A stretch of 63,530 bases of DNA, the filler included, from Octopus bimaculoides (taxonomy: Eukaryota): assembly GCF_001194135.2 (NCBI RefSeq). It is 6 parts of 6 records of this genome, joined end to end, with 100 filler letters (N's around TTAATTAATTAA, not from the genome) between each part and the next. Parts side by side here need not be neighbours in the genome. Positions count along the whole stretch, not along the records: positions 1 to 18,750 come from NC_069007.1; 5 more parts are not named here. One strand, given 5' to 3'. The notes under the pieces were generated by a model. That model did not search any database, was not told the DNA's origin, and saw only the letters and a list, made by a program, of their open reading frames with translations. Each line of letters opens with the position of its first letter. The stretch's first letter is position 1. This document shows, piece by piece, positions 1-18,750 of this stretch. The translations under genes and the position numbers were made by a program.

Positions 1-299
1 ATATATTTATTTATTTATTTTTATTTATTTATCGGTTTTAACTCAAAGCTGTCGCCATGCTGGGGCACTGTCGTCTTTCTACTGTTATTATTGACAGCCT
101 ATTCTGATATGTGCCATATGGTCAATAAGGGAGTTTGATGTCACTGCCCTCATTTGCGCCTCCTGTCGCGAGGTAGATTCATCTGGGACTCTCAACAGGA
201 AGAGATCCAGTTTTGTTTTAAAAACACCTACATCCACCTTTTAATATTCTTTGAGAGAATATAAAAAAAACTGTGGGCCCCTAAATCACAGGCTGTTGC

Positions 300-1830
300 A
301 GTAACTGGTCCTGAAGCATGACGACATTGTTGGGATCTTTGGCACTGTCAGTGGCGATCCGTTCTGGCATTTGTGTAGCTGTCAATGCCAAAATTTGGCA
401 CAATTACTTCCAGGATCTTCTAGGATCACCACTTCATCTATGGCTAATATATCTTCTTCACCAATGTCGATGTAATCCATCGTAACTGCCTCACTGGTTA
501 TAACTGAGACGGCAAAGAAATCCATTGGCTAGTTCACTTTTGAATTGGTCATTAAGTACCCCGCTGATCCTGGTTGGGTTATCTGTGATGGATCCATCCT
601 TCTGGAAGAGGGGTCCTATTTTGCAGCGTACTGAGGCCCTTTCTTTCGCATAAAGAAAACTTTTGGATTTGACTTTGTTTTTTTTTTATAACCCAGGCTT
701 CTTTGTCTGCTCTCTCTCTTTCACATAGGATTGTTGCAGGCGTTTTTCAATCTCCATCAGTGTTGTTTTAAGGCGGAACCTTTCACTATTTTTGGAATGT
801 TGGTTGAAGCCATTTGCAACCTTCGTCCGTCGCCTCATGAGGATCTTCCTCTCTCTTGGAATCTCGTTCCTTTTTGTGTTAGCCTTGTACTCTGGGACAT
901 ATTTCTGGCATATCGCTTGTATAACAGACATGAAATACTCTAGTTTCATGCCAATGTCTGGTGTAGAAAGACATTTTCGTCAGTCCTGTCTGAGGATCTC
1001 TTTTTGGATCGATTTCCAGTCTGCTTTGTGGAAGTTCAGATTGGAGAGATTTTGGGTGCTTCCTTTAGGTTGTATGTCTCTCGCTACTTTTTGTCTGTAC
1101 ATAGACAGCTGTATTATGTTGATCCGAAACTAATGTCGGCGTCACTATCACATTATGAACGATGTCCATGTTGTTTGTGAAGCAGAGATCCAATATGGTT
1201 GGTCGGAGCACAATTTGCTCCATGAATAGGGCATTAGTGAGGTTGAGCAGGGACGCCGCCTGTACTTGTTTGCAATGAGTTATTCCTGAGAGTATGGGGC
1301 CCTCGGGCCATTTGACAGTTAGGAAGTTGAAATCACACATAAGAAACACGCTCACGTGATATTCCAGTTTCATGAGGGTTTCTTTTATTTTTGTGAGGCA
1401 ATCTTCAAACTTGCCCGTGTGATTTGGAGTATTGAGTGGGCGATATGTATTGCATATGACTGGATTGTGTTGTCTTATGGATACAGTTTGAGTGTCACAT
1501 ACTGAATTTTAGTATGACAGTAGGGCATGGGCGCGAGGTCCTCACGGATATATACAGCAACTCCACCATGGCTCCTTTTCCTTTTGTCCGTTCGCAGTAC
1601 GGTATATTTTAGCACGTATGCTCTTGCATTCTCTCTATCAGGCCTAAGATGAGTTTCTACGAGTGCTATGCATAGGGCTTGATGGCATGCAGTAAGGTCT
1701 CTCAGGAAAAAGATTTTGGTTTTGTTGTGATGCAACAGGCCTCCAATATTTAGTAAAAATATTGGCGTGACGATTGCACTGGCGTTAGGGGAGGCAATAC
1801 CGTGTCTGTTGATTGTGGTGGTCTTGCGCT
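300..1830 (-). mobile_element. Decayed CR1/L2-type LINE ORF2 5' half (APE endonuclease plus linker); boundaries approximate
   Basis: Minus-strand peptides across frameshifts: IALVETHL, RTDKRKRSHGGVAVYIREDL, CDFNFLTVKW, ILDLCFTNN...VSDQH, and FLYAKERASVRCKIGPLFQKDG...LNDQFK. Confidence 0.8.
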
Positions 1831-1832
1831 AG

Positions 1833-1911
1833 GTGACGGGGACCTAAATACACCAACACCGGTTGTCAAGCGGTGATGGGAAGAGAGGACAGACACAGAC
1901 ACAAAGAGACA

Positions 1912-1986
<75 letters not shown>

Positions 1987-2138
1987 GACGGGCTTCTTTC
2001 AGTTTCCGGCTAACAAATCCACTCGCAAGACTTTGGTCGGCCTGAGGCTATAGTAAAAGACAGTTGCCCAAGTTTCCACGCAGTGGGACTGAACCCGGAA
2101 CCATGTGGTTGGGAAGCACACTTCTTACTACACAGCCA
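1833..2138 (-). mobile_element. tRNA-derived SINE family C (GGCTGTGTGGTAAG head, CORE-like CCTTGGGCAAG, internal (TA)n), 3' end missing
   Basis: Reverse-complement match to the copy at 22383-22784. Internal (TA)n at 1915-1985. Confidence 0.8.
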
Positions 2139-2178
2139 TTTAAAAATAATATTTTCTCATTTGTCTTCTTCTTTTCAG

Positions 2179-2295
2179 CTTCCGTTCACTGCTGCGGCAC
2201 CCATTCATCGTGGCTTTTTGACTGATGTTGACACTCGCTGGCTTTCTCTTTCTCAGAGTTGTGATGATCGTACCAGACAAGAACGAGGATTAGAA
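2179..2295 (+). CDS. GCLC: GCLC-like gene, visible coding exon 1 (117 bp; upstream exons not in window)
   Basis: ttttcag acceptor and gtgagt donor. Encodes LPFTAAAPIHRGFLTDVDTRWLSLSQSCDDRTRQERGLE, matching the GCLC segment [38 protein letters not shown]. Confidence 0.95.
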
Positions 2296-2324
2296 GTGAG
2301 TTTCAATACATTTACCTAAATCAA

Positions 2325-2520
2325 GGCGCTGAGCTGGCAGAATCGTTAGGACGCCGGACAAAATGCTTAGAGGCATTTCGTCCGTCTTTACATTCTGAGG
2401 TCGACTTTACCTTTTATCCTTTCAGGGTCGGTAAAATAAGTACCAGTTGAGCACCGGGGTCGATGTAATTGACTTAACCCCACTCCTGATATTGCTGGCC
2501 TTGTGCCGAATTTGAAACCA
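2325..2520 (+). mobile_element. SINE family B (GGCGGCGAGCTGGCAGAA head), about 30 bp downstream of the exon 1 donor
   Basis: Homologous to 5035-5263, 56186-56380 and 58455-58573 (GGTCGACTTT.CCTTT.ATCCTTTC.GGGTCG, AAGTACCAGTT). Confidence 0.8.
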
Positions 2521-2650
2521 GTATTTATATCTCACTCTGTAAATGGCGTCTGAAGTAAATTCTTTAAAACAATTCCTCCTCAGTTTCTTAGCAAAAATCG
2601 TTTTGATGAATACATGTAAAGTGTTTGGGATAAATTTGATAGTTGGCATA

Positions 2651-3107
2651 CGAGGTCTGATCAATTAGTATCCGGACTGTTGCTATAGTAACGAATCTAA
2701 AGCACGCAGAGTAAAGTCGCTTGGTAAAAATTGACCTTAAACTCTGCTGCGTATGCGCATTAAATTTTAATGTTCTAGCTCACTTCCACTGTTTATTGCA
2801 GTGCTTGAAAGGAACGTGTGTAGCGTGTGATCGTCGCATTGTCCATGACAGAGAAAGTTGTCATGGCGATACCTGCTCAGAGGCCAACACAAAGTTGCAG
2901 AAAGTGTTTGGAGAGGAGTGTATGAGCCGCACATAGGTGTACGGGTGGTTCAGGCGTTTCCAAGATGTCCAAAAAAATGTCGAACGTTCTGGGAGATACG
3001 CAACCAACAGAACTGAGAAAAACATCGCAGATGTGCGTGCAGCCGTGAGGGGAAATTGTCGAATCACCATCCGTGAGTTATCAGAGGATGTGCAGATTAG
3101 TTACGGT
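2651..3107 (+). mobile_element. Mariner transposon 5' remnant
   Basis: TA followed by a CGAGGTCTGATCAA TIR. N-terminal HTH peptide LQKVFGEECMSRT*VYGWFRRF...RSGR...RITIRELSEDVQISYG. Confidence 0.85.
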
Positions 3108-3867
3108 GACCCTCTCCATCCAGGGTTTGACAACAGTCTCCAGCAGTTTCACATAGCCGTCTGAACTGAGCCAAAGACCCTGTTCAAAGATGTAAGGCGG
3201 CATGATGTTACCCTTACTAGAGACACATACAAAGACCGTCACAGTTTGGGGAAACTTGATTTTCATGATTCATGAAACATCACATGGATTGTGGGTAAAC
3301 CCCCTGTTCTTTTGGGTGTTGTGAAACTGGTCCTGGTAGACATTCTTTTTATATGAGAAGGTCCAGACGATCCTTTTGATCAGCTTGTTCGGGAGCTTCT
3401 TTGCGTTTGTCAAGCTGTTCTCCTTAGTCTTGGCTGTCAGAATTTGTCTCTTGCGCCTCTTGTATCAGTTGTAACTAAGGTCCTCATTCAAGGCCGTCTT
3501 CATGGTGGAGACTCCAACACCTATCACTATCGCCAAAGCCTGGATTCCTTTACTTAGATCTTCCATTACGCTGTCCTGCAGTTGTTGGGTGAATTCTGGC
3601 GTGCAGAACGCCTGCTGTATTCCTTCCTGATGGCAACGGCTTCAAAGTCTCCCTCTTGCAGCTGGCCATATCACATCTTACAGCCTTTACACTGTTCTCA
3701 AAGTATTCTGCTGCAGACATGATGACATCATTTTGGTACCCAGCAATAATCATCATGGCACAGGTAATTCTTTTTTAATATTCAGACCGTTAACCGTTCA
3801 CCAGTACATCAAGCTGTTTCTGAAATGAAGACATTAAAACATCGTCAGATTGAGTCGGGACACTCTA
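3108..3867 (-). mobile_element. Tc1/mariner-superfamily (maT/DD37D-like) transposon 5' remnant
   Basis: Minus-strand TA then TAGAGTGTCCCGACTC terminus. Peptides AKKLPNKL...WTFSYKKNVYQDQFHNTQKNR (FSDEK motif decayed) and KFPQTVTVFVCVSSKGNIMPPYIF...YVKLLETVVKPW. Confidence 0.75.
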
Positions 3868-4031
3868 TATTAAAGAAGACCTTGAAGCAGGTGAGAAGAT
3901 TGGTTGTAGAAAATCTGTCTCCACAAATTCTGTTTGATTCATGCGAGCATGGAAAGTGTACGCGTTAAATTATGATTATAATGGTACTAATTTAAATATG
4001 AACCGTTTATGACCGAGTGTGGGTCGGTATT

Positions 4032-4421
4032 GTTGTTGTTGTTGGCACTCCGTCGCTTACGACGTCGAGGGTTCCAGTTGATCCGATCAACGGAATAACC
4101 TGCTCGTGAAATTAACGTGCAAGTGGCTGAGCACTGCACAGACACGTGTACTCTTAACGTAGTTCTCGGGGATATTCAGCGTAACACAGTGTGACAAGGC
4201 TGACCCTTTGAATTACAGGCACAACAGAAACAGGAAGTAAGAGTGAGTGAAAGTTGTGGTGAAAGAGTACAGCAGGGTTCGCCACCATCCCCTGCCGGAG
4301 CCTCATGGAGCTTTAGGTGTTTTCGGTCAATAAACACTCACAACGCCCGGTCTGGGATTCGAAACCGCGATCCTATGACCGCGAGTCCGCTGCCCTAACC
4401 ACTGCGCCATTGCGCCTCCAC
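4032..4421 (-). mobile_element. Full-length tRNA-derived SINE family A with (AAC)n tail and 12-bp TSD
   Basis: Minus-strand head GTGGAGGCGCAATGGCGCAGTGGTTAGGGCAG...GGTTTCGAATCC (A/B boxes). TSD TGGGTCGGTATT at 4020-4031 and 4422-4433. Confidence 0.92.
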
Positions 4422-4503
4422 TGGGTCGGTATTAGTTAAAGAATAAATGCCATGAAATCGTTTCTTTTATAAATATACTTTATAATCTCTTGTCTTCATT
4501 TAG

Positions 4504-4642
4504 CCTTTGACAAATGGCAGTGTTTTTATACCAACAACGCGTTTTGATACAGTATGCAGTTACCTTTCTGTGAGCGACCAATTTTATAACGACTATGAGT
4601 ACAGTTATGATCCTGAGCAGTATGAATTATTGAAGGCAGAAG
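4504..4642 (+). CDS. GCLC: GCLC-like visible exon 2 (139 bp, phase 0-1)
   Basis: cttcatttag acceptor and gtattt donor. Encodes PLTNGSVFIPTTRFDTVCSYLSVSDQFYNDYEYSYDPEQYELLKAE(G), matching PLKNNNYRISKSRYDSIDSYL...YND...IYEQLLQEG. Confidence 0.93.
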
Positions 4643-4921
4643 GTATTTAGAAATTCTCTAAAGACATAAAAATAGTTTTTGATTTATTTTGTATGAAAAT
4701 ATTATCATTAACAGAATTATCTTTTTCCCTTTTCCGACTTTGTATCGAGTTGCGAAGATTTACTCTCAATTACATTCATTAAAGCATCTAAGACTCATGT
4801 TAATCGTTCAAAAACACACAGAAACGAATAATTTCACTTAACTTCTTGGGGCCAAAATCTTCGTTGCACTGTCTGTAATCTGGTTAGGGATGACGATTTT
4901 GACACCAAGTAATGTCAAGGA

Positions 4922-5490
4922 GCACTCCGTCGTTTACGACGAAGAGAGTCTCAACTGATACGATCAACGGAACAGCTTGCTCGTGAAATTAGCGTGCAAA
5001 TGGCTGAGCACTCCACAGAAATGTGTACCCTTAAGGCGGCGAGCTGGCAGAAACGATAGCACGCCGGGCGAAATGCTAAGTGGTATTTCGTCTGCCGCTA
5101 CGTTCTAAGTTCAAATTCCGCGAGGTCAACTTTACCTTTCATCTTTCGGGGTCGATTAAATAAGTACCAGTTACGCACTGGGGTCGATATAATCGACTTA
5201 ATCCGTTTGTCTGTCCTTGTTTGCCCCCTCTATGTGTAGCCCCTTGTGGGCAGTAAAGAAATAAGAAACGTGTACCCTTAACGTAGAAAGGAGATTCAGC
5301 GTGACACAGTGTGACAAGGCTGGCCTTTGAAATACAGTTACTACTCGTTTTTGCCAGCTGAGTGGACTGGAGCAACGTAAAATAAAGTGTCTTGCTCAAG
5401 GACACAACGCGTCGCTAGGAATTGAATTCATGACCTTACGATCGTGTGCAGAATGCCCTAACCCTAACCCTAACCACTAAGCCACGCTCC
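4922..5490 (-). mobile_element. SINE sharing the family-A 3' tail but with a different tRNA/CORE-like head; interrupted by a family-B SINE
   Basis: 4922-5034 and 5282-about 5330 match the family-A tail. About 5360-5490 carries GTGTCCTTGAGCAAGACACTTTATTT (CORE-like) and a GGCTTAGTGGTTAGGG head on the minus strand. Confidence 0.8.
5035..5263 (+). mobile_element. SINE family B nested inside another SINE
   Basis: Flanked by the duplicated target AGAAA(T/C)GTGTACCCTTAA at 5017-5034 and 5264-5281. Confidence 0.9.
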
Positions 5491-5867
5491 TTCTCACCAA
5501 GTAAAAAATTATTGAGTAAAGTTAACAATTTTTGTGTTAACGAATAGTTAATGCATGTCTTCTATACTGTGATTGCTTTAGTTTCAGCGAACATTCAACG
5601 AACGTTGTGTTCTTGAGCAAGACACTTTATCATTTGCCAGACAAATCAACCCTGATACATACCTTGATGTATTCTAATAACTCAGAGCTACCATAGAAAT
5701 CTTATACAATCTGAACCTAGTTTTTAAAATTCTACCAGAGTCAACATTGTGTTCAATATTATAGAATTTTCACAAAATTGCATCATACCTGACGATGGAT
5801 TCAAAATTGTTTTGTTTTTTTTTCTGGATTCTTTACTTACTCTAATCCAATCTCGCTAGTTGTACTA

Positions 5868-6049
5868 CGGGGTGCTGAAAACTTACTGGCTTTAAGGATG
5901 TCGCGAAATGCCTGGCTAGAGGCCCAAACTGAAGGACCGCTGCAATAAGTATGTGAATCTGAGAAGGGAATATATTAAATACAATCATAATTAACTGATC
6001 CTCCAGTATTTTCTTTTCCCCAAAGACAGGAACTTTTCAGCATCCCTCA
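5868..6049 (+). mobile_element. Mariner-derived MITE, copy 1
   Basis: TA-flanked TIRs GGGGTGCTGAAAA...TTTTCAGCATCCC. Carries a remnant of the transposase C-terminus. Confidence 0.82.
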
Positions 6050-6072
6050 TATGTATATATTAAATATATATA

Positions 6073-6279
6073 TGAGAGGGCGCTGAAAAGTTCCTGGCTT
6101 TAAGGGTGTCACGAAATGCCTGGTTAGAGGCTCAAACTTCTGAGTTCTTTTCCAGTGCTTAGAAAAACTGAAGGACCACTGTAATAAGTGTGTGAATCTG
6201 AGAGGAGAATATGTTGAATAAAATCATAATTAACTGATCCTCCTGTATCCAAAGCGAGGAACTTTTCAGCACCCCTTCG
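6073..6279 (+). mobile_element. Mariner-derived MITE, copy 2
   Basis: TIRs GAGGGCGCTGAAAAGTTCC / GGAACTTTTCAGCACCCCTTCG with TA flanks. Encodes LKDHCNKCVNLRGEYVE*, a mariner C-terminus. Confidence 0.85.
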
Positions 6280-6592
6280 TATATATATACACACACACAT
6301 ATAGACACCTCAAGCAAATAGACGTGCCTCGTTTTATTGTTCTCTGTGTAAACACTACTCCCCAGTACAGCGTCCAAACGGGTTGAATCATTAAAAACCG
6401 CGCAAGGTATGTCTACGAAATACTAGATTAGGTATTTGACTGCAATAAATGACATTTTATTTCTTGAAATAAATCTTTAAGAAATGGTGTCTATTTACCT
6501 TTGATACATATTACTCAATTGTCAATTTTTCTCTTGAAAACATGTTACAATTTTATAAATTTAATTAATTAAAATATTTTTTAATTACTCAG

Positions 6593-6702
6593 GTGTTGAT
6601 GAAATGATGGCTAAATATGTTGCCCAACTTCTTGTTAGAGACCCAATCACTATGTACAAAGAAAAGATTGATCAAGACGTGAAAGATACTGATCATATTC
6701 AG
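6593..6702 (+). CDS. GCLC: GCLC-like visible exon 3 (110 bp, phase 1-0)
   Basis: ttactcag acceptor and gtaaaa donor. Encodes (G)VDEMMAKYVAQLLVRDPITMYKEKIDQDVKDTDHIQ, matching [26 protein letters not shown]...DHFE. Confidence 0.93.
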
Positions 6703-6861
6703 GTAAAACAGTTTATTTGTAAATAAATCTATAAAATAGTAAAGGAACGCAGCTAAGTGGTTGAGGTATTCGGTTCACAATCATAGTGCCGTGGGTTCAA
6801 TTCGTAGTGAATAGGACGCCAAAGTGTTACAGAGTTAACTTCCTAACTGCTGCTGGAATTC

Positions 6862-6966
6862 GGTGCCACATGAAAAGCACTGGTGATGGTGCCTTGCAAA
6901 AATCACTGATGATAGTGCCATGTAAACAGAGCTGGTGCTGGTGCCACGTAAAAAAGCAGTGGTGAT
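6862..6966 (+). repeat. Four-copy 26-bp minisatellite (GGTGCCAC.TAAAA.GCACTGGTGAT) downstream of a degenerate tRNA-like SINE head at about 6744
   Basis: Units start at 6862, 6888, 6914 and 6940. Confidence 0.7.
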
Positions 6967-7199
6967 GGAACTATAAACATAGGATTCCTTGAAGAGAAAC
7001 AAACACTCATAAGGATCTTGTACTCTGACTGCTATTTTATTGATCCAACCCAAATGGTTGAAAGCAGGATTTAAACTCATATTGGAGAGAACTAGAAGAA
7101 ATACGTGGGACATTTATAGGAAATCTAACAACTCTGTAATCTTATTACCTAATGTATAAATTACACGGTGGAACACGATTTTTGTCCTTGGGTAGGAGC

Positions 7200-7604
7200 T
7201 GTTATTTCCTATTTGCTTACTCTTAGAAAGTATGAAAAATGGCTAATATTTCCTTTAAACATTGCTCTTCTTGTATTTATTCAAACCACACATAATTCCT
7301 CTCAACACATGGCTATGATACTACCCCATTACTGCTGCTCATGATCAGAGATGCACATATTGTCAGCCACTTAGGGACTTGCTCAAGTGATTACGGTTAA
7401 GCAACTGTTAAGTAAATCTGTGATATTGAACAGAATATTTGATTCAGCAATGTCTGCTTCCGCAACTCAGCGCTGAATTTGTCTGAAATTTAAAGGAAAA
7501 TAAGTCAATTTCAGAACATCGATGTCCAAGTGACAAAGGCAAAGTTTGAAGGGAATGGTAGTCATTTCCTTTGATTTCTAGATAGAAGCAAATAGGAAAT
7601 AACA
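7200..7604. mobile_element. MITE-like non-autonomous element bounded by a perfect 19-bp inverted repeat
   Basis: TGTTATTTCCTATTTGCTT at 7200-7218 and AAGCAAATAGGAAATAACA at 7586-7604. No TSD identified. Confidence 0.6.
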
Positions 7605-8330
7605 CTTACTGGCAAAACATACTCTCACACAAATAATAAAACTTTTGTTACAGTGCTATCAATGTGCATGAAAGTTGTGACAAATGCCAGACAGCATAAT
7701 TGCTGGAATTCAATAATGTTGTTGAAACATAAGGAATCCTTTCTTGAACTTTCAAATTTCATACATTTTTCGTAAAAGAGGACTGTTAAAGGGGATAAAA
7801 ATATTATGAACAAAAAATATTGAAGGGTTAAATATGATCAGTAAACCATTTACTGATATTAGAAGACTAAGCTGAAAGCTCTCTACAATAGTAATTGTCA
7901 ATTGATGTTTATTATGAATCTTTATCGAAAGATTCCAAAACATCAATGAGAAAATTTTAATTGGATGTGTTTTAATTGAAAAATTTTTCACAGCTTTGAC
8001 CTCACAAAATATACACTTTTACATCATACATTGGTAAAGGTCAAAGGTTACTTTACATTTTGCTTTTTGTTTAAAATATGTGAACATTTTATATGCATTT
8101 TACACAGCAATTATAACAAACATGACTAAATACTTTCTCTACACATCATAATAGTAAATAACAATTAGTGTACGTTATAAATGAGCTATACCCTATATGT
8201 TATCATAACCAACAATCAGTGATGTGCATTATACTCATGTATGTATTATGAACGGATAAATATATTTGTTATTAAATCGATTATATATGTTCTATATCTA
8301 TGACTAAAGTTGGTTAACATTCTGTTTCAG

Positions 8331-8417
8331 ACCATTATTGGAAGTAATTGGCACACCTTAAAACTGAAACTACCTGATGAGAACTCTGGATGGAAAATAG
8401 AATTCAGAACAATGGAG
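8331..8417 (+). CDS. GCLC: GCLC-like visible exon 4 (87 bp, phase 0-0), containing the GWxxEFR catalytic segment
   Basis: ctgtttcag acceptor and gtcata donor. Encodes TIIGSNWHTLKLKLPDENSGWKIEFRTME, matching [31 protein letters not shown]. Confidence 0.93.
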
Positions 8418-8874
8418 GTCATATTTTAGTAGAGACTGTCTCCGTATAAAAGATATTTCTGTATGCTTCATTGTATATAGGCGCAGACATAGCTTTTTGG
8501 TGTTGGCTTCATATCAGCATGGTTACGAGTTCAATCTCACTGCAAGACTCCTTGCAGAAATATTTTTTAATAACATTGGGTTGATTGATATTTGTGAGTG
8601 GGATTTGGAAGAATTTGTTATATTCTTTGACTTGTTAGACCCATTGGACAGCAGCCATGCCACAGGCACCAATTCCAAGGATTCGATCAGTCATATCAAT
8701 TCCAGAACTTATATTTTTAAGTCCAGACTTTATTTTCTCGATCTCCATAAGCACCATGACTGGTAGTTTGTAAACAGTGTACATGTATGCACAATCACGA
8801 AGCCATACACACACACGCTCACATGCATGCATACGCATAGATACATATATAAATGTATGACTTGTTTGAACCAT

Positions 8875-9190
8875 CAGACACACATAAGCATGCACACATA
8901 CATACATAAGCACACACACACACACACACACAAGCATACATACAGACACACATAAGCATGCACACATACACATACACACATAAGCATGTACACATGCACA
9001 CACACAGATACACATAAGCATGCACACATACACACACAGAGACACACAGACACACATAAGCAGGCACACAGACACACATAAGCATGCACACAGACACACA
9101 AACACACATAAGCATGTACACATGCATACATACACACCCACATAAGCATGGACATAGACACATAAGCATACACACATAAGGATGTACACA
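8875..9190. repeat. CA-derived minisatellite (CACACATAAGCATG-type units)
   Basis: About ten recurrences of CATAAGCA embedded in CA-rich sequence. Confidence 0.8.
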
Positions 9191-9226
9191 TACACACACA
9201 CACATACAAATATATATATATAATAA

Positions 9227-9635
9227 CAGGCGTGGCTGTGTGAAGGCGCAGGTGTGGCTGTGTGGAGGTGCAGGTGTGGCAAGAAGCTTACTTCCCAACC
9301 ACATGGTTCCGGGTTCACACCTTGTCTTCTACTATAGTCTTGGGCTGACCAAAGCCTTGTGAGTGGATTTGGTAGACGGAACCTGAAAGAAGCCCATCAT
9401 ATACTTACTTTGCATATATCTGTGTTTGTGTCTGTGTTTGTTCCCAACCCACCATCGCTTGATAACCGATGTTGGTATGTTTACGTCCAATAACTTAGCA
9501 GTTAGGCAAAAGACGCCGATAGCATAAGTACTAGGCTTACAAATCGACTAGGGTCGATTTGTTCGACTAGAAACCCCTTACGGTGGTGCTCCAGCATTGC
9601 TGCAGTCAAATGACTGGAACAAGTGTAAGAATAAA
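9227..9635 (+). mobile_element. SINE family C with triplicated 5' end, ending 20 bp upstream of GCLC visible exon 5
   Basis: Homologous to 22383-22784. 22-bp head units start at 9227, 9249 and 9271 (last one partial). Confidence 0.85.
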
Positions 9636-9655
9636 AATATTGTCTATATTTCCAG

Positions 9656-9908
9656 CTTCAGTTGACCGACTTTGAAAACGCTGCCCTTGTTGTATTTATG
9701 GTTCTTCTTACCCGAGCTATGGTTACCTTCANNNNNNNNNNNNNNNNNNNNNNNNNNNNNNNNNNNNNNNNNNNNNNNNNNNNNNNNNNNNNNNNNNNNN
9801 NNNNNNNNNNNNNNNNNNNNNNNNNNCGCTGCCCTTGTTGTATTTATGGTTCTTCTTACCCGAGCTATGGTTACCTTCAAACTGAACTTTTTGGTCCCAT
9901 TGACAAAG
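9656..9908 (+). CDS. GCLC: GCLC-like visible exon 5 (true length about 105 bp; split by an N gap with a 53-bp duplicated overlap)
   Basis: tttccag acceptor at 9655 and gtaaat donor at 9909. Merging the duplicated flanks gives LQLTDFENAALVVFMVLLTRAMVTFKLNFLVPLTK, matching [35 protein letters not shown]. Confidence 0.92.
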
Positions 9909-10319
9909 GTAAATATTGATTTCTCTACAATAAATAATGAACTCTTTGATTTAACTAAAGATATATGAACTACAGTTGGCGTTTAATTATATCTCAAAAC
10001 ATTGCTTTCATAAGATTATCATTTTTTTAAAAGTTAACATCTTTTTTAATCGTGAAAGTTTTTAAAATATTTACACTATAGTTCAACCGATTTGACTTCA
10101 GCCACTATCATGTTTCGGATTTTGGGATATAAACAGGAAACTGCTTCGTGAGAAAAGGGCGAAGCAACTGAGATTTTTAGATCATGTGATAAGGAAGAGC
10201 GCTTGGAAAATTTATAACCAGTTCTTTTTCTTAAATCATTTACAATCTACTGCATCTCAAAGCCCATGTTTCATTGTCATGTAGCATAGCTGTTTGCACA
10301 CAGACATCATACAATCTAC

Positions 10320-11095
10320 CTTTCACTCAAAGGTGGGGTCCCATTGTTAACAACAAAACTAGTAGCTCTCTGAATTTTGCCCAGCCTGTTCTTATTCTAG
10401 CAACTATGCTCTCAGAACTTATATATACTGCTTCCAAGGATTCTCACAGACATTTGAAGAAGCCTATTTTCTGTACCTTCTGAGTTTTTATTGTACCCGC
10501 ACATCTGTCACACACAAAGACTACTTTCTCTGTTAATTTTCCTGTGGTACTGCTGCACCTCTTATGTATCCATAGCTTACACTGGGTACTCTGTATGGTA
10601 TGAAGTACCTACAAACACATTTTCTACAAACGGTCAGTGTTAGTGATTTGTCCACTTTTGCTACTTAGTACAACTTTGGTCATTGCTAAATTAACTTCAT
10701 GGCCCTTTGATTTCAGGGATTGCTTCAAAACCTGAAATTTCTTTTCTAGTTTTTGTTGGGATTCAGCTACAAAAACAAGGTCATCAGCATAGAGAAGCTC
10801 CCAAGGGCAGCCCGTCTTAAATTCCACTGTTATGCCCTGGAGGACTATGATAAACAAGAGGAGGCTGAGAACTGATCCTTAGTGAACTCCTACGTGTGCA
10901 TTGAATTCCTTGCTATACTCATTGCTGACTTTCACTTTATTGACATCTCTGCACATGGCGGGTACAGCTCTCACCAACCACTCATCTATCCCTTGCTTCC
11001 ACATTGACGACAAGGTAAAAGAGTGGAAGACCCTATCACCGGCTTTCTCCATATTGCTAAGCCAAGTACAGAGGTTTATTTTTGGCTAAATATAT
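10320..11095 (-). mobile_element. RTE-clade LINE reverse-transcriptase fragment
   Basis: Minus-strand peptides GIDEWLVRAV, GVH*GSVLSLLLFIIVL, CPWELLYADDLV, CTQCKLWIHKRC and ARIRTGWAKFRELL. Confidence 0.85.
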
Positions 11096-11359
11096 NNNNN
11101 NNNNNNNNNNNNNNNNNNNNNNNNNNNNNNNNNNNNNNNNNNNNNNNNNNNNNNNNNNNNNNNNNNNNNNNNNNNNNNNNNNNNNNNNNNNNNNNNNNNN
11201 NNNNNNNNNNNNNNNNNNNNNNNNNNNNNNNNNNNNNNNNNNNNNNNNNNNNNNNNNNNNNNNNNNNNNNNNNNNNNNNNNNNNNNNNNNNNNNNNNNNN
11301 NNNNNNNNNNNNNNNNNNNNNNNNNNNNNNNNNNNNNNNNNNNNNNNNNNNNNNNNNNN

Positions 11360-11399
<40 letters not shown>

Positions 11400-11435
11400 C
11401 AATATCTTCTTACATGTAATTTTTCCTTCTCCAAG

Positions 11436-11517
11436 GTTGCTGAAAACTTCACACCAGCACAAAAACGAGATGCCATTACTAAAGAAAAGTTTCACTTCAG
11501 GAAAAATGTTCAACAAG
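11436..11517 (+). CDS. GCLC: GCLC-like visible exon 6 (82 bp, phase 0-1)
   Basis: ttctccaag acceptor and gtaaga donor. Encodes VAENFTPAQKRDAITKEKFHFRKNVQQ, matching VDENMKVAQKRDAVLQGMFYFRKDI. Confidence 0.92.
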
Positions 11518-11892
11518 GTAAGAATTAAATTTCTTGGAAATTCTGAGAACGAAAACACAATTTTAACTTTGACTAAGTTTTGTAAAGGATTAAAAAATCT
11601 ATTAGGGATACCCCAAAAAGCCCCTAATATTTTCTTGTTTAGACACAGATCATAACAATCAAGAGTTGTGACATCCTTGGTCATCATAAACAGTATTTAA
11701 GGATTTCTCAATGTTACCATATGGGTATATATTTTCTCTATTGGAACACAACGATGGGTGTTATGTATCTTAAATATAGGGAGGTTAGGGTGACTGGGTT
11801 ACAGATACATAGACAAGCACCGTTATTTATCACTGAACATGCACAATTAAATGTATTTATTATAGCTAATCTATAATTTTTTTGCTAATTAG

Positions 11893-11963
11893 AAGTCGCT
11901 GATTGTAAGCTAACTGACGATATTTACACCTTGATGACTCTAAACGAAATCATTAATGGAAAG
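11893..11963 (+). CDS. GCLC: GCLC-like visible exon 7 (71 bp, phase 1-0)
   Basis: ctaattag acceptor and gtaaaa donor. Encodes (E)VADCKLTDDIYTLMTLNEIINGK, matching EEYTLMSIDTIINGK. Confidence 0.9.
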
Positions 11964-12052
11964 GTAAAAGATATTTTTAATAATCTTTTAATCTTTAACT
12001 CTATATTTAACTATTTAACTATTTTCAATTATTTTGATTCTATTCCCAACAG

Positions 12053-12170
12053 GATGATTTCCCTGGTTTAATTCCTCTCATATGCAAATATCTCGATCAT
12101 GTTGACTACGATTCCAGTAAAAGACCTAAAATAATGCAATACCTGAAATATCTCTCAGACAAGGCTGCAG
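12053..12170 (+). CDS. GCLC: GCLC-like visible exon 8 (118 bp, phase 0-1)
   Basis: cccaacag acceptor and gtaaga donor. Encodes DDFPGLIPLICKYLDHVDYDSSKRPKIMQYLKYLSDKAA(G), matching FPGLIPILNSYLENMEVDVDTRCSILNYLKLIKKRASG. Confidence 0.93.
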
Positions 12171-13292
12171 GTAAGATGGTTCATTTGTTTTCAACAATAT
12201 TAAACAAATGTTATTATAAACATTCAACCTTAAAATTCAGTATTGAAAGTATTTATTTAAATAATAATTCGACATATGTTTCGATAATAGATATTTATAA
12301 AATATATATCCACCATTCCATTAGTTATTGAAATCTGTTTAAAATTAAGAAAAATATAGCGTTTATTGCACAAAGAAGATTATCTCCCATGCAATAGAAA
12401 TGTACAAGATTGCTTCCCAACCACGTGGTTCNNNNNNNNNNNNNNNNNNNNNNNNNNNNNNNNNNNNNNNNNNNNNNNNNNNNNNNNNNNNNNNNNNNNN
12501 NNNNNNNNNNNNNNNNNNNNNNNNNNNNNNNNNNNNNNNNNNNNNNNNNNNNNNNNNNNNNNNNNNNNNNNNNNNNNNNNNNNNNNNNNNNNNNNNNNNN
12601 NNNNNNNNNNNNNNNNNNNNNNNNNNNNNNNNNNNNNNNNNNNNNNNNNNNNNNNNNNNNNNNNNNNNNNNNNNNNNNNNNNNNNNNNNNNNNNNNNNNN
12701 NNNNNNNNNNNNNNNNNNNNNNNNNNNNNNNNNNNNNNNNNNNNNNNNNNNNNNNNNNNNNNNNNNNNNNNNNNNNNNNNNNNNNNNNNNNNNNNNNNNN
12801 NNNNNNNNNNNNNNNNNNNNNNNNNNNNNNNNNNNNNNNNNNNNNNNNNNNNNNNNNNNNNNNNNNNNNNNNNNNNNNNNNNNNNNNNNNNNNNNNNNNN
12901 NNNNNNNNNNNNNNNNNNNNNNNNNNNNNNNNNNNNNNNNNNNNNNNNNNNNNNNNNNNNNNNNNNNNNNNNNNNNNNNNNNNNNNNNNNNNNNNNNNNN
13001 NNNNNNNNNNNNNNNATATATATATATAATTTTTATTCTTGTACTTGTTTCAGTCATTTGACTACGTCCATACTGGAGCAACACCTTAAGGGGTTTTAGT
13101 CGAACAAATCGATCCCAAGACTTATTCTTTGTAAGCCTTGTAGAAACAATTATCACTGCTAAAACTATTAGGGCTTTATCCATTTGTAGCTCATTTAACG
13201 AACCCAGAATATTGTTACAGAAGACACCAACTAATTTCCATCTGAAATGAAAAACGAATTATTCATTATTCTAATTTATATTTGTCTTGCAG

Positions 13293-13459
13293 GAAAGATC
13301 ATGACAATGGCCCAATGGACAAGGCAGTTTGTTACAAATCATGAAGAATACAAGAACGATTCTGTTGTCAGTGAGAGAATCGCTTATGATTTTATTATGG
13401 AATGTGAAAAGATTGTCAACAGTGAAGGACGATTTCCAGAAGCTTTTATCAGGAGTTAA
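13293..13459 (+). CDS. GCLC: GCLC-like terminal coding exon ending in TAA
   Basis: tcttgcag acceptor. Encodes (G)KIMTMAQWTRQFVTNHEEYKNDSVVSERIAYDFIMECEKIVNSEGRFPEAFIRS*, matching GELMTVARWMREFIANHPDYKQDSVITDEMNYSLILKC. Confidence 0.93.
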
Positions 13460-14847
13460 AGAAACATTCCAACTTTATTGCATGTTTAATTAACTATGAG
13501 TTACAGAGAATGTAGCCTACATACTAATTTACATTATACTAACTAAACAGAATATACATATATATATATACTTTCTGACGTGACTCTATCTATCTTTCTA
13601 TTTTTGTATCTTTTTCCCCCTCTCGTTCTTCCTTCTGTTACTACTATATCTCTCTCTTCCTCCCTGTCTCTCGTTGCTCACCTATTTTCTACTTCCTCCC
13701 CTTTTTTCTCCCTCTACCACTCTTTCTCCTTACCCCTCGCTGGTCACATGTGTCCAGCTTTACTTCCTTTCTTCCTTGGCTATCACCAAGCACGTACACG
13801 AACTATTCTTCATCCCTCTTCATTCCAGTTCGTTGCTTCACAGAGTTAAATATACACATATTTGTCCACGTCTGGCTGTATAGCCTTTTCTGTTTATTCT
13901 ACTGTTTCGTTTTCCTGTCTTGTTTTCTGTCCGCCACTACATTCCTCCATGGTACAAATTTAATTTGTGATCCGTGGGAAGAGCCATTTTAACGATGCGT
14001 CCTGCCCTAACTCTTCGAAATGCCAGTGTTAGAATGGTGGCAGCTGATGAAGGAAATGTTCTCTATGTGGCCTGAGTGTTTTCTGTACTTGTTTATCATT
14101 TTGTCTACGTTTTGTTTGCAATGTCCTGTACCCAGATATGCATCTATATACACAGGTAGATGTAAGTATGTACATACATGTACNNNNNNNNNNNNNNNNN
14201 NNNNNNNNNNNNNNNNNNNNNNNNNNNNNNNNNNNNNNNNNNNNNNNNNNNNNNNNNNNNNNNNNNNNNNNNNNNNNNNNNNNNNNNNNNNNNNNNNNNN
14301 NNNNNNNNNNNNNNNNNNNNNNNNNNNNNNNNNNNNNNNNNNNNNNNNNNNNNNNNNNNNNNNNNNNNNNNNNNNNNNNNNNNNNNNNNNNNNNNNNNNN
14401 NNNNNNNNNNNNNNNNNNNNNNNNNNNNNNNNNNNNNNNNNNNNNNNNNNNNNNNNNNNNNNNNNNNNNNNNNNNNNNNNNNNNNNNNNNNNNNNNNNNN
14501 NNNNNNNNNNNNNNNNNNNNNNNNNNNNNNNNNNNNNNNNNNNNNNNNNNNNNNNNNNNNNNNNNNNNNNNNNNNNNNNNNNNNNNNNNNNNNNNNNNNN
14601 NNNNNNNNNNNNNNNNNNNNNNNNNNNNNNNNNNNNNNNNNNNNNNNNNNNNNNNNNNNNNNNNNNNNNNNNNNNNNNNNNNNNNNNNNNNNNNNNNNNN
14701 NNNNNNNNNNNNNNNNNNNNNNNNNNNNNNNNNNNNNNNNNNNNNNNNNNNNNNNNNNNNNNNNNNNNNNNNNNNNNNNNNNNNNNNNNNNNNNNNNNNN
14801 NNNNNNNNNNNNNNNNNNNNNNNNNNNNNNNNNNNNNNNNNNNNNNN

Positions 14848-14879
<32 letters not shown>

Positions 14880-14884
<5 letters not shown>

Positions 14885-15434
14885 ATTTGGCAGCATAAGT
14901 GGCTGTCCTGGATAGGACGATTGTTACTGTTGTTTAGCCTCAGGGAACATCGTTTCCAGCTGGCTATACGACACAATATTTGTGTCCTCATATTTTCGAA
15001 CAGGAAGTCCAGTACCCCTATCTAGCACAAAGCCACGTCTGTGGGCCGGTTTCTGGGTTATTGCAATTTATCAGTACAAAGTAGCTACATGGTTAGGTGG
15101 CGTTGCTGAATTCCCGTTCTAAAATATATAATTTTCAAAGTGACACACAGTCACTAATCTAATAAATAGAAACATTATTATTTCTAAATCTTTCAGAGAG
15201 ATATCTAGTAACAGTTCTTTAAAGTAAAGACTATTTGTCAACGTAATGTGGCTGTCCTGGATAGGACGATTGTTACTGTTGTTTTAGTCCCAGGAAACAT
15301 CGTTTCCTGCTGGCTGTATGACACACTGTCTGTGTGTCACTTTGAAAATTATATATTTTAGAACGGGAATTCAGCAACGCCACCTAGCCAAGCAGCTACT
15401 CTGTGCTGATAAATTGCAATAACCCAGAAACCGG
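14880..15434. repeat. Compound local duplication: about 97-bp direct repeat plus a 105-bp inverted repeat
   Basis: Direct: 14880-14975 vs 15228-15325. Inverted: 15046-15150 vs 15330-15434 (5 mismatches counted by eye). Confidence 0.88.
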
Positions 15435-15489
15435 TTAAAATGCATCTCCTGCTGTGAAAATACGGGGACACAGCTTAGGATACAAGCGC

Positions 15490-15680
15490 CCACTTGAACA
15501 GCTTAGGATTTAATGGCCCATAGCTCTTCAATACTCTCTTGAAGGAGCTGAGATTTCCACATAGTGTGGAAGTAGATGTCTTCAAAACCGAACTGGATCT
15601 CCTACTGTCAAGATTCCCAGATGATCCAACTTCACAGCTTGCACTAAATGCCGTGAACTCACTCATTCACCAAATGCCAA
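15490..15680 (+). mobile_element. CR1/L2-type LINE ORF2 C-terminal fragment
   Basis: Encodes GP*LFNTL...VEVDVFKTELDLLLSRFPDDPT...NSLIHQ across frameshifts. Confidence 0.65.
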
Positions 15681-15964
15681 CTGTTAAAGGCTCCGCAACC
15701 CACTTGAAATTTTGAATAGTGAGCGAATAATCACTTTATAACATGTTTGCCGTTCCTCATTTTATTTTTTACCTTCATTGTTACGAATTGATTCTTCTTT
15801 TGCAAGCTCTAAAATTTATATTTTTAGGCTCCGCAACACACTTAAAATTTCGAAATAATGTGAAATAAATAGACTTTCGACTTTGTTTTCTTTATTATTT
15901 TTAATACGAGGTCACCGAATATATGTGTTACATGAGGTCTAGATTACACACACATTAAACTAAA

Positions 15965-17072
15965 TTAAACAAATTGTCAAGATTGTAGCAGAAAAGATAA
16001 TTCTTTTTGGCAAAAGGCATCCATCCCTTGTGTTATGATTGAGTCAGTTAAACCGAAAATCTTAAAGTTTCCTTTGCTGTCATGATCTGGCCGATTCTTT
16101 CTAATCAACCTCTGAACGTTGCATTTAGATACTTCTTGTTCTATTCCACCAATGATGATTTTTCGGTTTGTCCGTTGATCTTGTAAAAAAATCTTGTTCT
16201 CTCTGTGATCCTTTTTTTGTCTCTACTACGACTCTACAACTGCAGTTTTTAAAGGAATTGCACTTGCAACAGGAAATGTCAAACAAATCCTTTGTTGCAT
16301 TGTTTTTCAACACATTACACTTTGTTTGAAACGATGGCACATTTTCTTCTATTTTTAACTGATTTTAGTAATGCTTGCTGCTTTAAATAAAAGTTTAAGG
16401 CTTTCGGTTTAACTGACCCAATCGTAGCACAAAGGATGGATGCCTTTTGCCAAAGAAGAATTATCTCTTCTGCTACAATCTTGACAATTTGTTTAACTGA
16501 AGTATCTTTCTTAACTACGTTCTTTTCTTTTTCTCATTCAAATAAAACGCATTTTAGTACGCCCTTGTAAGTTGGAGAAACTCGCTCGCTAAGATCACAG
16601 AGTGAGCACTCAGTATCATGGCTTATGAGTCATCACTAAATGTAAACAACACTAAATTTAACACGATCATTAATTTTAATACAATGGCCAAAAGTCAAGG
16701 TACAAAGCAGAAAACTTCACACACGTACGACGTACGTCCACATGCAACAACCGTTGCAGCGGCACTGGAGAGAAGTTCACACACTAGTTCTCTTAACTGT
16801 CAATGCGGACCCTCAAGGTATTAGTCAATTGTATTGAAACTTGGTATGCAACCTTTTAAGAATACTATATTTACTGTTTTGCATTCTACTAACGACTTAC
16901 AATCCACGAAATTCAAAAATGGTGATTTTCAAAATTTTCGATTGCGTTGCGGAATCTGCAAAAAATATATAACCGCAATGTTCTTTATACACCTTTTTTT
17001 AACCATAATTCGCAACAAAATATCGATTCTTGGTTACCAATTACGAAAGTTGAATTTTTGCCCCTCCTCTAA
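15965..17072 (-). mobile_element. hAT-superfamily (hATm-like) DNA transposon 5' remnant with an inverted duplication
   Basis: Minus-strand terminus TTAGAGGAGGGGCAAAAA at 17072. Peptides VAEEIILLWQKASI and DLFDISCCKCNSFKNCSC. The subfamily assignment is from memory of such motifs and is unverified. Confidence 0.5.
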
Positions 17073-17514
17073 TATATATATATACTCCTCCTTCTCTTCC
17101 GTCTCTTCCTGTCTCTTTGTTTCTTCCTCTCTCCCCGTGTGTGCAGCATTCATTTACTCATTGCCTGCTGGACACTCATCCTGCTGCAGCTCTTATGTTG
17201 ACCCTCTCTCTGTATCTCTCTTTATTCTCTCATTCTCTGCCCCTCTCTCTATGCAATGTAGAGTATAACCAAGCGTGCAACTAGCTACTGTGTATATTCA
17301 CAATCATAATATAGGGTTATGTAATAACCTCCACGTAAATCATAACTCACATTTTTATCTTGGCTTTTAATCGGGAAGTCAACGCCCTAACTGCGAAAAA
17401 ATTATCTTCTGTCTATGTTGTAATGGCCTATATATATTATAGAACAGATGGAATAGTATACGTTTCAGACAGCAGCCACAAGAAATGATATAAACAACGT
17501 TTATTTTATAGATG

Positions 17515-17675: not shown

Positions 17676-17743
17676 GTGTGTGTGTGTGTATGGTGTGATT
17701 ATATGTATATATCTATGTATGTATGAAACTAGCTCTTTGTCGG

Positions 17744-17817
<74 letters not shown>

Positions 17818-18710: not shown

Positions 18711-18750
<40 letters not shown>

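What the first reader, a model, noticed from the sequence alone, without database searches (positions are those of the whole stretch)
2179..13459. Intact but active-site-diverged GCLC paralog: possible neofunctionalised ligase or pseudoenzyme
Seen: 9 exons, canonical splice sites, consistent phases, and no stop or frameshift over 331 aa, despite transposon-filled introns. Known: animal and fungal GCLC keep RYDS, DHFENIQSTNWQTMRFKPPP and GWRVEFRP nearly invariant. Here they read RFDT, DHIQTIIGSNWHTLKLKLPD and GWKIEFRT, and two exons are 1 and 2 codons shorter than the human segments as I recall them. DxRW, NW, the KP lysine and EFR are retained. From memory of the yeast Gsh1 structure (unverified), the lost Tyr and Arg residues contact glutamate or nucleotide, while the retained Glu/Arg are catalytic. 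Inference: this is a constrained duplicate with altered substrate or activity rather than the housekeeping GCLC. Cephalopods have co-opted glutathione-related enzymes before (GST-derived S-crystallins).
Basis: partly seen in the sequence, partly recalled or inferred. Interest (0 to 1): 0.72.

Follow-up and report, generated by a model that had tools for sequence, protein, structure and literature searches.

The report
Diverged octopus GCLC paralog, 3′ half
This is the last nine exons of one of several tandemly duplicated, fast-evolving copies of the glutathione-synthesis enzyme GCLC in Octopus bimaculoides; it is kept by selection, keeps its catalytic core but has a remodelled substrate and nucleotide pocket, and what it makes is unknown.

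Summary
Nine + strand exons (2179-13459) with AG/GT borders and consistent phases give 331 aa. They are 100% identical to O. bimaculoides RefSeq 'GCLC-like' proteins XP_014785340.1 / XP_052833098.1. The gap at 9732-9826 lies inside one exon. It is flanked by an exact 53-nt duplication, and collapsing that gives the 105-nt exon seen in every relative. The other two gaps are intronic.

This is not the housekeeping gene. A canonical GCLC with all classic motifs sits on another chromosome in O. bimaculoides, O. vulgaris and O. sinensis; Argonauta has one too. The window gene belongs to an Octopus cluster of 4-5 GCLC-like paralogs with the canonical 16-exon layout. These form a 100%-bootstrap clade on a long stem.

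dN/dS is 0.28 (95% bootstrap CI 0.19-0.42), against 0.05-0.08 for canonical GCLC. Metal-binding Glu residues, Lys451 and Arg472 (yeast numbering) are kept. Tyr362 is Phe, and Arg449 and Arg468 are Lys. A loop is 2 residues shorter and the C-terminal tail is missing.

The most likely reading is an active ATP-dependent ligase with altered specificity or kinetics. Function and expression are untested. The gene is already annotated, but I found no description of the paralog family.

The parts
2179..2295 (+). Exon 8 of 16 (117 nt): LPFTAAAPIHRGFLTDVDTRWLSLSQSCDDRTRQERGLE. Contains DxRW (yeast Arg313, kept).
   Evidence: same 117-nt exon in paralogs and canonical GCLC.
4504..4642 (+). Exon 9 (139 nt, ends in phase 1): contains TTRFDT, i.e. 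yeast Arg361 kept and Tyr362 changed to Phe.
6593..6702 (+). Exon 10 (110 nt, one codon shorter than the 113 nt of all relatives): ...AKYVAQLLVRDP...DHIQ. Human His370 is Tyr and His373 is Gln here.
8331..8417 (+). Exon 11 (87 nt vs 93 in canonical): TIIGSNWHTLKLKLPDENSGWKIEFRTME. Trp445, Lys451, Glu470 and Arg472 are kept. Arg449 and Arg468 are Lys. There is a 2-residue loop deletion.
   Evidence: Of 21 family-conserved columns in this exon, 11 are changed.
9656..9908 (+). Exon 12 (105 nt after collapse: 9656-9731 + 9880-9908), interrupted by assembly gap 9732-9826. The segment 9827-9879 is an exact copy of 9679-9731.
   Evidence: RefSeq proteins use the same join.
11436..11517 (+). Exon 13 (82 nt): VAENFTPAQKRDAITKEKFHFRKNVQQ.
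11893..11963 (+). Exon 14 (71 nt vs 98 in canonical): EVADCKLTDDIYTLMTLNEIINGK. The variable Cys-rich linker is shortened.
12053..12170 (+). Exon 15 (118 nt): DDFPGLIPLICKYLDHVDYDSSKRPKIMQYLKYLSDKAA.
13293..13459 (+). Exon 16, coding part with TAA at 13457-13459. The protein ends ...FPEAFIRS, about 26 residues before the end of canonical octopod GCLC.
16897..16955 (-). Annotated terminal coding exon of the convergent neighbouring GCLC-like paralog (XP_014785336.1 and the newer 601-aa model). It encodes a non-homologous tail, DSATQSKILKITIFEFRGL*.
1826..2178 (.). High-copy interspersed repeat plus (AT)35 directly upstream of exon 8. Similar repeats fill other introns (4030-4426, 4918-5497, 9240-9655, 13016-13290).

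Best explanation
The window carries exons 8-16 of a lineage-specific GCLC paralog of Octopus bimaculoides (chromosome CM046627.1, RefSeq XP_052833098.1). It arose by DNA-level duplication of the cephalopod GCLC gene and was then amplified in tandem.

Shown: it is a duplicate, it is under purifying selection, it keeps the GCL fold, and it keeps every residue listed as a metal, phosphate or gamma-carboxylate contact (Asp49, Glu50, Glu52, Glu96, Glu103, Lys451, Glu470, Arg472; also Arg313 and Trp445).

Inferred: it still carries out ATP-dependent activation of a carboxylate and ligation to an amine. However, its pocket is altered, so its substrate preference, nucleotide handling or regulation differs from housekeeping GCLC. 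The alterations are Tyr362Phe at the glutamate alpha-carboxylate contact, Arg449Lys and Arg468Lys next to the ADP ribose, a 2-residue deletion in the adjacent loop, 11 of 21 conserved positions changed in exon 11, and loss of the C-terminal tail. The housekeeping gene is retained elsewhere to make gamma-glutamylcysteine.
For: Identity and duplication:
- 100% match to XP_014785340.1.
- Full model and chromosome.
- Canonical GCLC on another chromosome.
- Tandem and convergent paralogs in O. vulgaris and O. bimaculoides; O. sinensis paralogs share one contig.
- Identical 16-exon layout and phases.
- NJ tree: paralog clade 100% bootstrap, inside cephalopods 100%.
- Among 1.84 billion cluster representatives, only one is close (79%); the next is 48%.

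Constraint:
- dN/dS 0.27-0.29, CI 0.19-0.42, and lineage-specific pN/pS 0.28.
- Canonical GCLC gives 0.077 overall and 0.048 in the C-terminal half.

Core kept, pocket changed:
- Residue table against the contact list in PMC5613772 Table 3.
- 70 of 100 columns that are at least 95% conserved are kept. The 30 changes are concentrated at P0465 residues 404-436 (13 of 24 vs 17 of 76, Fisher p=0.005; the region was chosen post hoc).
- Substrate-contact residues differ among paralog lineages (Tyr362, Trp445, Arg313, Arg361), while metal ligands never do.

Fold: AF2 pLDDT 87.7, and Foldseek TM 0.85 to yeast Gsh1 3IG5.
Against: There are no expression, protein or activity data.

The N-terminal catalytic residues lie outside the window. 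The 59-nt exon 6 is not in the assembled sequence; two gaps lie there. So intactness of the whole gene is not proven.

Arg-to-Lys and Tyr-to-Phe are conservative changes. Tyr-to-Phe occurs in two otherwise canonical GCLCs, so the same reaction may simply persist.

dN/dS of 0.28 is 4-6 times more relaxed than canonical, and pairwise NG86 is crude.

The AF2 model is driven by canonical homologues, so it says little about the pocket.
Confidence: 0.5

Rival explanations
1. Isozyme. It still makes gamma-glutamylcysteine, with altered kinetics or regulation (for example feedback inhibition by glutathione or dependence on GCLM). In this reading it is a tissue- or stage-specific extra GCL.
For: All listed catalytic, metal and Cys-moiety contacts except Tyr362 are kept in this paralog. 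Tyr-to-Phe is tolerated in two otherwise canonical GCLCs. The gene is under purifying selection.
Against: 30 of 100 positions conserved from fungi to mammals are changed, and the changes are concentrated in the motif around Trp445, Lys451 and Arg468. Arg449 and Arg468 are invariant in 127 of 127 other GCLCs. Sister paralogs have lost Trp445 or Arg313, which argues that the family is not held to the ancestral substrates.
Confidence: 0.25
2. Pseudoenzyme. It is folded and maintained by selection but catalytically impaired, and acts by binding, for example by sequestering GCLM, a substrate or another partner, or as a structural protein in the manner of cephalopod enzyme-derived crystallins.
For: Many invariant pocket residues are replaced. 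The C-terminal ~26 residues are lost. Protein evolution is fast: 69-81% identity to the closest Octopus relatives, against 96.5% for canonical GCLC between the same species.
Against: Every metal-binding Glu, Lys451 and Arg472 is retained in all five paralog lineages after long divergence. That is unexpected if catalysis were dispensable.
Confidence: 0.18
3. A decaying or unexpressed copy that merely has not yet acquired a stop codon. Alternatively, the apparent open frame is an artefact of joining across the exon-12 gap.
For: An assembly gap sits inside exon 12 and exon 6 is unassembled. The RefSeq model is patched there. No transcript evidence was available.
Against: dN/dS is 0.28, with no bootstrap replicate reaching 1. 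The window lineage has 44.5 synonymous against 51.5 non-synonymous changes over 169 and 710 sites. All nine exons are open with intact splice sites. The collapsed exon 12 has exactly the family length. The true exon-5 donor and exon-7 acceptor flanking the missing exon are intact.
Confidence: 0.07

Closest known systems
Canonical animal GCLC (glutamate-cysteine ligase catalytic subunit; Pfam PF03074), e.g. O. bimaculoides XP_052823647.1 and human GCLC
   Same: Homologous over the full length. Same 16-exon architecture and phases. Same fold. Same metal-binding Glu residues, Lys451 and Arg472.
   Different: Only about 50% identical to the same species' canonical GCLC. Different chromosome. Tyr362Phe, Arg449Lys, Arg468Lys, human His370Tyr, a 2-residue loop deletion, a shortened Cys-rich linker, and no C-terminal tail. 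dN/dS is 4-6 times higher.
Saccharomyces cerevisiae Gsh1 (PDB 3IG5, 3IG8, 3LVV, 3LVW)
   Same: The only solved structure found by sequence (E 3.5e-49). The AF2 model superposes on it with TM 0.85. It is the reference for residue numbering.
   Different: 30% identity. Yeast keeps all the pocket residues that the octopus paralog has changed.
Other Octopus GCLC-like paralogs (O. vulgaris CAI9741796/797/799 and CAI9742280; O. sinensis XP_029652761, XP_036370436, XP_029652703; O. bimaculoides XP_014785336, XP_052834018)
   Same: Same clade. They share derived residues (13 canonical-invariant sites fixed to a new residue), the exon-11 deletion and the early stop. O. vulgaris paralogs lie in tandem and O. 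bimaculoides has a convergent neighbour.
   Different: 67-81% identical to the window protein. The window gene has a private 1-codon deletion in exon 10. Other lineages have lost Trp445 (CAI9741796 lineage) or Arg313, Arg361 and Trp445 (XP_029652703 lineage).
Members of the GS/GCL carboxylate-amine ligase superfamily with different substrates or weak activity (E. coli YbdK; 1-naphthylamine gamma-glutamylating GS-like enzyme of Pseudomonas sp. JS3066)
   Same: They are precedents, from my own knowledge of these enzymes, for this fold keeping ATP- and Mg-dependent chemistry while changing the amine acceptor or activity level. Both appear as structural neighbours in the Foldseek search (YbdK TMt 0.73).
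   Different: Very distant (7-11% identity) and bacterial. This is an analogy of evolutionary mode only, not membership.
Cephalopod enzyme-derived lens crystallins (GST-derived S-crystallins, ALDH-derived omega-crystallin); from my own knowledge
   Same: Lineage-specific tandem amplification of a glutathione-related or detoxification enzyme gene, with divergence at the active site.
   Different: S-crystallins lose key catalytic residues and are massively expressed in the lens. Here the catalytic core is kept and nothing is known about expression.

Membership tests
GCS/GCLC family (Pfam PF03074, group 2 eukaryotic gamma-glutamylcysteine synthetases) | Significant sequence homology across the catalytic domain | tested here: met
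   PF03074 is precomputed on the identical protein P0001, and hundreds of GCLC hits were returned. E 3.5e-49 to yeast Gsh1.
GCS/GCLC family | GCL fold | tested here: met
   AF2 pLDDT 87.7, pTM 0.92. Foldseek 3IG5 E 2.9e-48, TM 0.85. The model is homology-driven.
GCS/GCLC family | Mg-binding glutamates (yeast Glu50, 52, 96, 103, 470), Lys451 and Arg472 | tested here: met
   Lys451, Glu470 and Arg472 are read in the window. The N-terminal residues are read in XP_052833098.1, outside the window. The contact list is from PMC5613772 Table 3.
GCS/GCLC family | Glutamate alpha-carboxylate contact Tyr362, and the invariant Arg449 and Arg468 | tested here: not met
   Phe, Lys and Lys respectively. Arg449 and Arg468 are Arg in 127 of 127 other GCLCs; Tyr362 is Tyr in 124 of 127.
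Housekeeping GCLC orthologue (the enzyme of glutathione synthesis) | Orthology to the single conserved animal GCLC locus | tested here: not met
   The canonical orthologue is a different gene on CM046604.1. In the tree, the canonical octopod sequences form their own clade at 99% bootstrap, excluding the paralogs.
Housekeeping GCLC orthologue | Synthesis of gamma-glutamylcysteine; heterodimer with GCLM | not testable with these tools
   This needs a biochemical assay or complementation.
Processed or unprocessed pseudogene | Stops or frameshifts, lost splice sites, dN/dS near 1, or lack of introns | tested here: not met
   Nine open exons with AG/GT borders. Introns at canonical positions. dN/dS 0.28, CI 0.19-0.42. 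Caveat: there is a gap inside exon 12 and exon 6 is unassembled.
Pseudoenzyme (catalytically dead homologue) | Loss of residues essential for chemistry | tested here: not met
   No metal ligand, Lys451 or Arg472 is lost in any paralog lineage. Activity itself is untested.

The most novel reading that the evidence does not exclude
Octopuses evolved a small tandem family of GCL-derived ATP-dependent ligases. The paralogs keep the phosphoryl-transfer core but differ at substrate-contact residues (Tyr362, Trp445, Arg313, Arg361). In this reading they make one or more gamma-glutamyl (or related amide) compounds other than gamma-glutamylcysteine, which would be a lineage-specific branch of thiol or amino-acid metabolism in an animal.
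Probability: 0.3. Interest if true: 0.7.

Novelty: new variant of a known kind. Interest (0 to 1): 0.5.

Why it matters
To my knowledge GCLC is a single-copy, slowly evolving, rate-limiting enzyme in nearly all animals. Here a cephalopod keeps the canonical gene and also maintains 4-5 fast-evolving paralogs under selection. Their catalytic machinery is intact, but their substrate and nucleotide pockets differ from every other GCLC and from each other.

If these proteins are active, they are candidates for new ligase specificities or for a new layer of glutathione regulation in octopus. If they are inactive, they would be a further case of cephalopods recruiting glutathione-pathway enzymes for other roles.

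There is also a practical point. RefSeq names XP_052833098.1 simply 'glutamate--cysteine ligase catalytic subunit'. That name would mislead expression and orthology studies.

Tried and rejected
- Two homologue searches returned no canonical octopus GCLC. This looked like 'only copy in the genome' until I noticed that no listed hit exceeded roughly query length + 250 aa (my reading of the hit lengths). A longer chimeric canonical query then found the 649-aa canonical proteins.
- P0001 is not on record as an encoded product. The 618-aa cluster member P0465 gave the locus instead.
I used Argonauta as the canonical dN/dS baseline.
- The Biterova & Barycki papers on the yeast structure are not held. 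I took the contact list from Table 3 of PMC5613772 instead.
- The first AF2 run, with 15 sequences, was unusable (pLDDT 39.9). I repeated it with 134 sequences.
- Orthology of the window gene with O. vulgaris CAI9741797 is suggested by gene order but not resolved by the tree (43-62% bootstrap). Identity is only 74-79%, so I left this open.
- dS between paralogs and canonical GCLC is saturated, so I could not estimate omega on the stem branch or test it for positive selection.
- No tRNA or Rfam family was found in the window.
- The mariner-like ORF in intron 8 gave only E=1 to SETMAR.
- Five literature searches found nothing on octopus or cephalopod GCLC paralogs and only a clinical paper for the human variants.

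Full report
**What is in the window**

The usable piece (1-18750) is AT-rich and holds five runs of N. A tblastn probe and three-frame reading recover nine + strand exons:
- 2179-2295
- 4504-4642
- 6593-6702
- 8331-8417
- 9656-9731 joined to 9880-9908
- 11436-11517
- 11893-11963
- 12053-12170
- 13293-13459 (TAA at 13457-13459)

All readable borders are AG...GT, the phases agree, and the product is 331 aa with no stop. The quoted motifs (TTRFDT, DHIQ|TIIGSNWHTLKLKLPDENSGWKIEFRT, DTRW) are present.

**The gaps**

Gap 9732-9826 lies inside an exon. The 53 nt before it (9679-9731) are repeated exactly after it (9827-9879). Collapsing this overlap gives a 105-nt exon. That is the length of the same exon in every paralog and in canonical GCLC, and the sequence is 91-97/105 identical to the three O. 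vulgaris paralog exons compared. I read it as two contig ends that overlap but were not merged. This is an inference; the join is not read.

Gaps 11096-11359 and 12432-13015 are intronic. The protein alignment is continuous across both junctions.

**Identity**

The 331 aa are 100% identical to O. bimaculoides XP_014785340.1, 'GCLC-like'. The current full model is XP_052833098.1 (618 aa) on chromosome CM046627.1. The window equals positions 21952-40701 of locus L003. It therefore holds exons 8-16 of a 16-exon gene.

Exon 6 (59 nt) is not in the assembled sequence. Two gaps lie between exons 5 and 7, and the true donor and acceptor on either side are intact. RefSeq bridges the hole by reading intron sequence. 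The AF2 model has pLDDT below 50 exactly there, at residues 184-205.

**Not the housekeeping gene**

My first two homologue searches listed no hit longer than about query + 250 aa, so they hid all full-length proteins. A longer query found canonical GCLC of O. sinensis (649 aa) and Argonauta. Cluster look-up added O. bimaculoides XP_052823647.1 (chromosome CM046604.1) and O. vulgaris. These proteins keep RYDS, DHFENIQSTNWQSLRFKPPP and GWRVEFRP.

The window protein is only about 50% identical to its own species' canonical GCLC.

**A tandem paralog family**

In O. vulgaris the genes for CAI9741796, CAI9741797 and CAI9741799 lie within about 275 kb of chromosome OX597840.1. CAI9742280 is on the same chromosome.

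O. sinensis has at least three paralogs on one 20-Mb contig.

In O. bimaculoides a convergent paralog begins 3.4 kb downstream of the window gene's stop. Its annotated last exon lies in the window on the minus strand, at 16955-16897.

The paralogs share the canonical 16-exon layout. Sizes are 150, 107, 108, 66, 117, 59, 218, 117, 139, 113, 87, 105, 82, 71, 118, 164, against 150, 110, 120, 66, 117, 59, 218, 117, 139, 113, 93, 105, 82, 98, 118, 242 in Argonauta. They are therefore DNA-level duplicates, not retrocopies.

In a bootstrapped NJ tree:
- the paralogs form a clade at 100%;
- that clade lies inside cephalopods at 100%;
- it is sister to the octopod canonical clade at 70%;
- its stem is long (0.38).

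A scan of 1.84 billion cluster representatives found one close relative (79%), and the next was at 48%. Whether non-Octopus cephalopods have these paralogs could not be tested.

**Selection**

Nei-Gojobori dN/dS for the window part against three O. vulgaris paralogs is 0.27-0.29. The bootstrap 95% CI is about 0.19-0.42, and 0 of 1000 replicates reach 1.

Changes private to the window lineage are 44.5 synonymous and 51.5 non-synonymous, giving pN/pS 0.28.

Canonical GCLC (O. bimaculoides vs Argonauta) gives 0.077, or 0.048 in the C-terminal half.

At the protein level, canonical GCLC is 96.5% identical between O. bimaculoides and O. vulgaris. The window protein is at most 81% identical to any relative.

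So the gene is constrained, but 4-6 times less tightly than canonical GCLC.

**Active site**

I used yeast numbering verified on the HMMER alignment and the contact list in Table 3 of PMC5613772.

Kept in the window gene product:
- Asp49, Glu50, Glu52, Glu96 and Glu103 (outside the window);
- Arg313, Trp445, Lys451, Glu470 and Arg472.

Changed:
- Tyr362 to Phe (the contact to the glutamate alpha-carboxylate);
- Arg449 to Lys and Arg468 to Lys. Their Leishmania equivalents are modelled at the ADP ribose, and both are Arg in 127 of 127 other GCLCs;
- a 2-residue deletion in the loop between them.

Of 100 window-part columns that are at least 95% conserved across 127 other GCLCs, 70 are kept and 30 are changed. 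The changes concentrate in exons 10-11: 13 of 24 at P0465 residues 404-436 against 17 of 76 elsewhere (Fisher p=0.005; I chose the region post hoc).

Thirteen canonical-invariant sites are fixed to a new residue in all five paralog lineages. One of them is human His370 to Tyr; H370L is a variant named in a paper on human GCL deficiency.

Across paralogs, metal ligands, Lys451 and Arg472 never change. Substrate contacts do: Trp445 is lost in two lineages, and Arg313 and Arg361 in one.

All paralogs end about 26 residues before the canonical C-terminus.

Caution: Tyr-to-Phe alone occurs in two otherwise canonical GCLCs.

**Structure**

With a 134-sequence alignment, AF2 gives pLDDT 87.7 and pTM 0.92. 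Foldseek finds yeast Gsh1 3IG5 at E 2.9e-48 and TM 0.85. This shows fold compatibility, not function.

**Interpretation**

Shown:
- the gene is a duplicate;
- it is distinct from the housekeeping gene;
- its 3' half (exons 8-16, all that lies in the window) is intact;
- it is under purifying selection;
- its catalytic core is kept and its pocket is remodelled.

Inferred: it is still an ATP-dependent carboxylate-amine ligase whose substrate, nucleotide handling or regulation differs from GCLC.

My estimated probabilities for the competing readings:

| Reading | Probability |
|---|---|
| Active ligase with altered pocket (best explanation) | about 0.5 |
| Isozyme still making gamma-Glu-Cys | 0.25 |
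| Pseudoenzyme | 0.18 |
| Decaying copy | 0.07 |

No paper in the held library describes these paralogs. The gene is already annotated automatically, so the novelty lies in the family and its pattern of divergence.

Noticed in passing
window 16897-16955 (- strand): Annotated terminal coding exon of the convergent neighbouring GCLC-like paralog. It has a good AG acceptor but encodes a non-homologous tail (DSATQSKILKITIFEFRGL*). The neighbour's homologue of exon 16 is nowhere in the assembled window and may be hidden in gaps 14184-14847 or 17818-18317.
   Followed up: partly
window 9679-9731 and 9827-9879; protein P0004: An exact 53-nt duplicate flanks the gap inside exon 12. The old model of the neighbouring paralog (XP_014785336.1) carries a duplicated LQLTDFENAALVVFMVLLTR at the same exon. 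This suggests the assembler broke at this exon, which is nearly identical between adjacent paralogs.
   Followed up: partly
L003:16503-19984 (upstream of the window): RefSeq XP_052833098.1 lacks the 59-nt exon 6 and bridges the hole by reading intron sequence (a 12-aa insertion relative to relatives). The true donor at 16504|GT and acceptor at 19984 are intact. Gaps lie at 17335-18045 and 19078-19475. AF2 pLDDT is below 50 at residues 184-205.
   Followed up: yes
L005:55444-60012; L007:48756-50754: A collagen/C1q-domain gene is nested on the opposite strand inside an intron of the canonical GCLC gene in O. bimaculoides, O. sinensis and Argonauta. This is a conserved nested-gene arrangement.
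   Followed up: no
window 1826-2178, 4030-4426, 4918-5497, 9240-9655, 13016-13290, 17490-17817, 18318-18750: High-copy interspersed repeats (up to 135 blastn hits within about 0.5 Mb of other octopus loci, including other chromosomes and species). No tRNA or Rfam match, so their class is unassigned.
   Followed up: partly
window 2937-3161 (+): An open stretch in intron 8 resembles the DNA-binding region of mariner/SETMAR transposases, but only at E=1 against the PDB. It may be a degraded transposon fragment.
   Followed up: partly
window 1915-1985, 8878-9208, 11360-11396, 18700-18750: Microsatellites: (AT)35, a long CA-rich compound repeat, and (TA)n abutting an assembly gap and the end of the piece. 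Simple repeats coincide with contig ends.
   Followed up: no
L001:62519-62677 / protein P0319: The O. vulgaris model CAI9741797 has a spurious N-terminus (it seems to lack Asp49 and Glu50). A proper exon 1 encoding MVFVIDGTLMAWEE...YWGDE lies in the genome. The apparent loss of metal ligands in that paralog is therefore an annotation artefact.
   Followed up: partly
proteins P0473/P0471 and P0470/P0003: Sister paralog lineages are more diverged at substrate contacts. One has Arg313Ala, Arg361Gly, Tyr362Phe and Trp445Gly; another has Trp445Thr. Both keep all metal ligands, Lys451 and Arg472.
   Followed up: partly
tool behaviour: the search for homologous proteins listed no hit longer than about query length + 250 aa. 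A 331-aa query therefore hid all full-length (about 606-649 aa) relatives, including the canonical octopus GCLC.
   Followed up: yes
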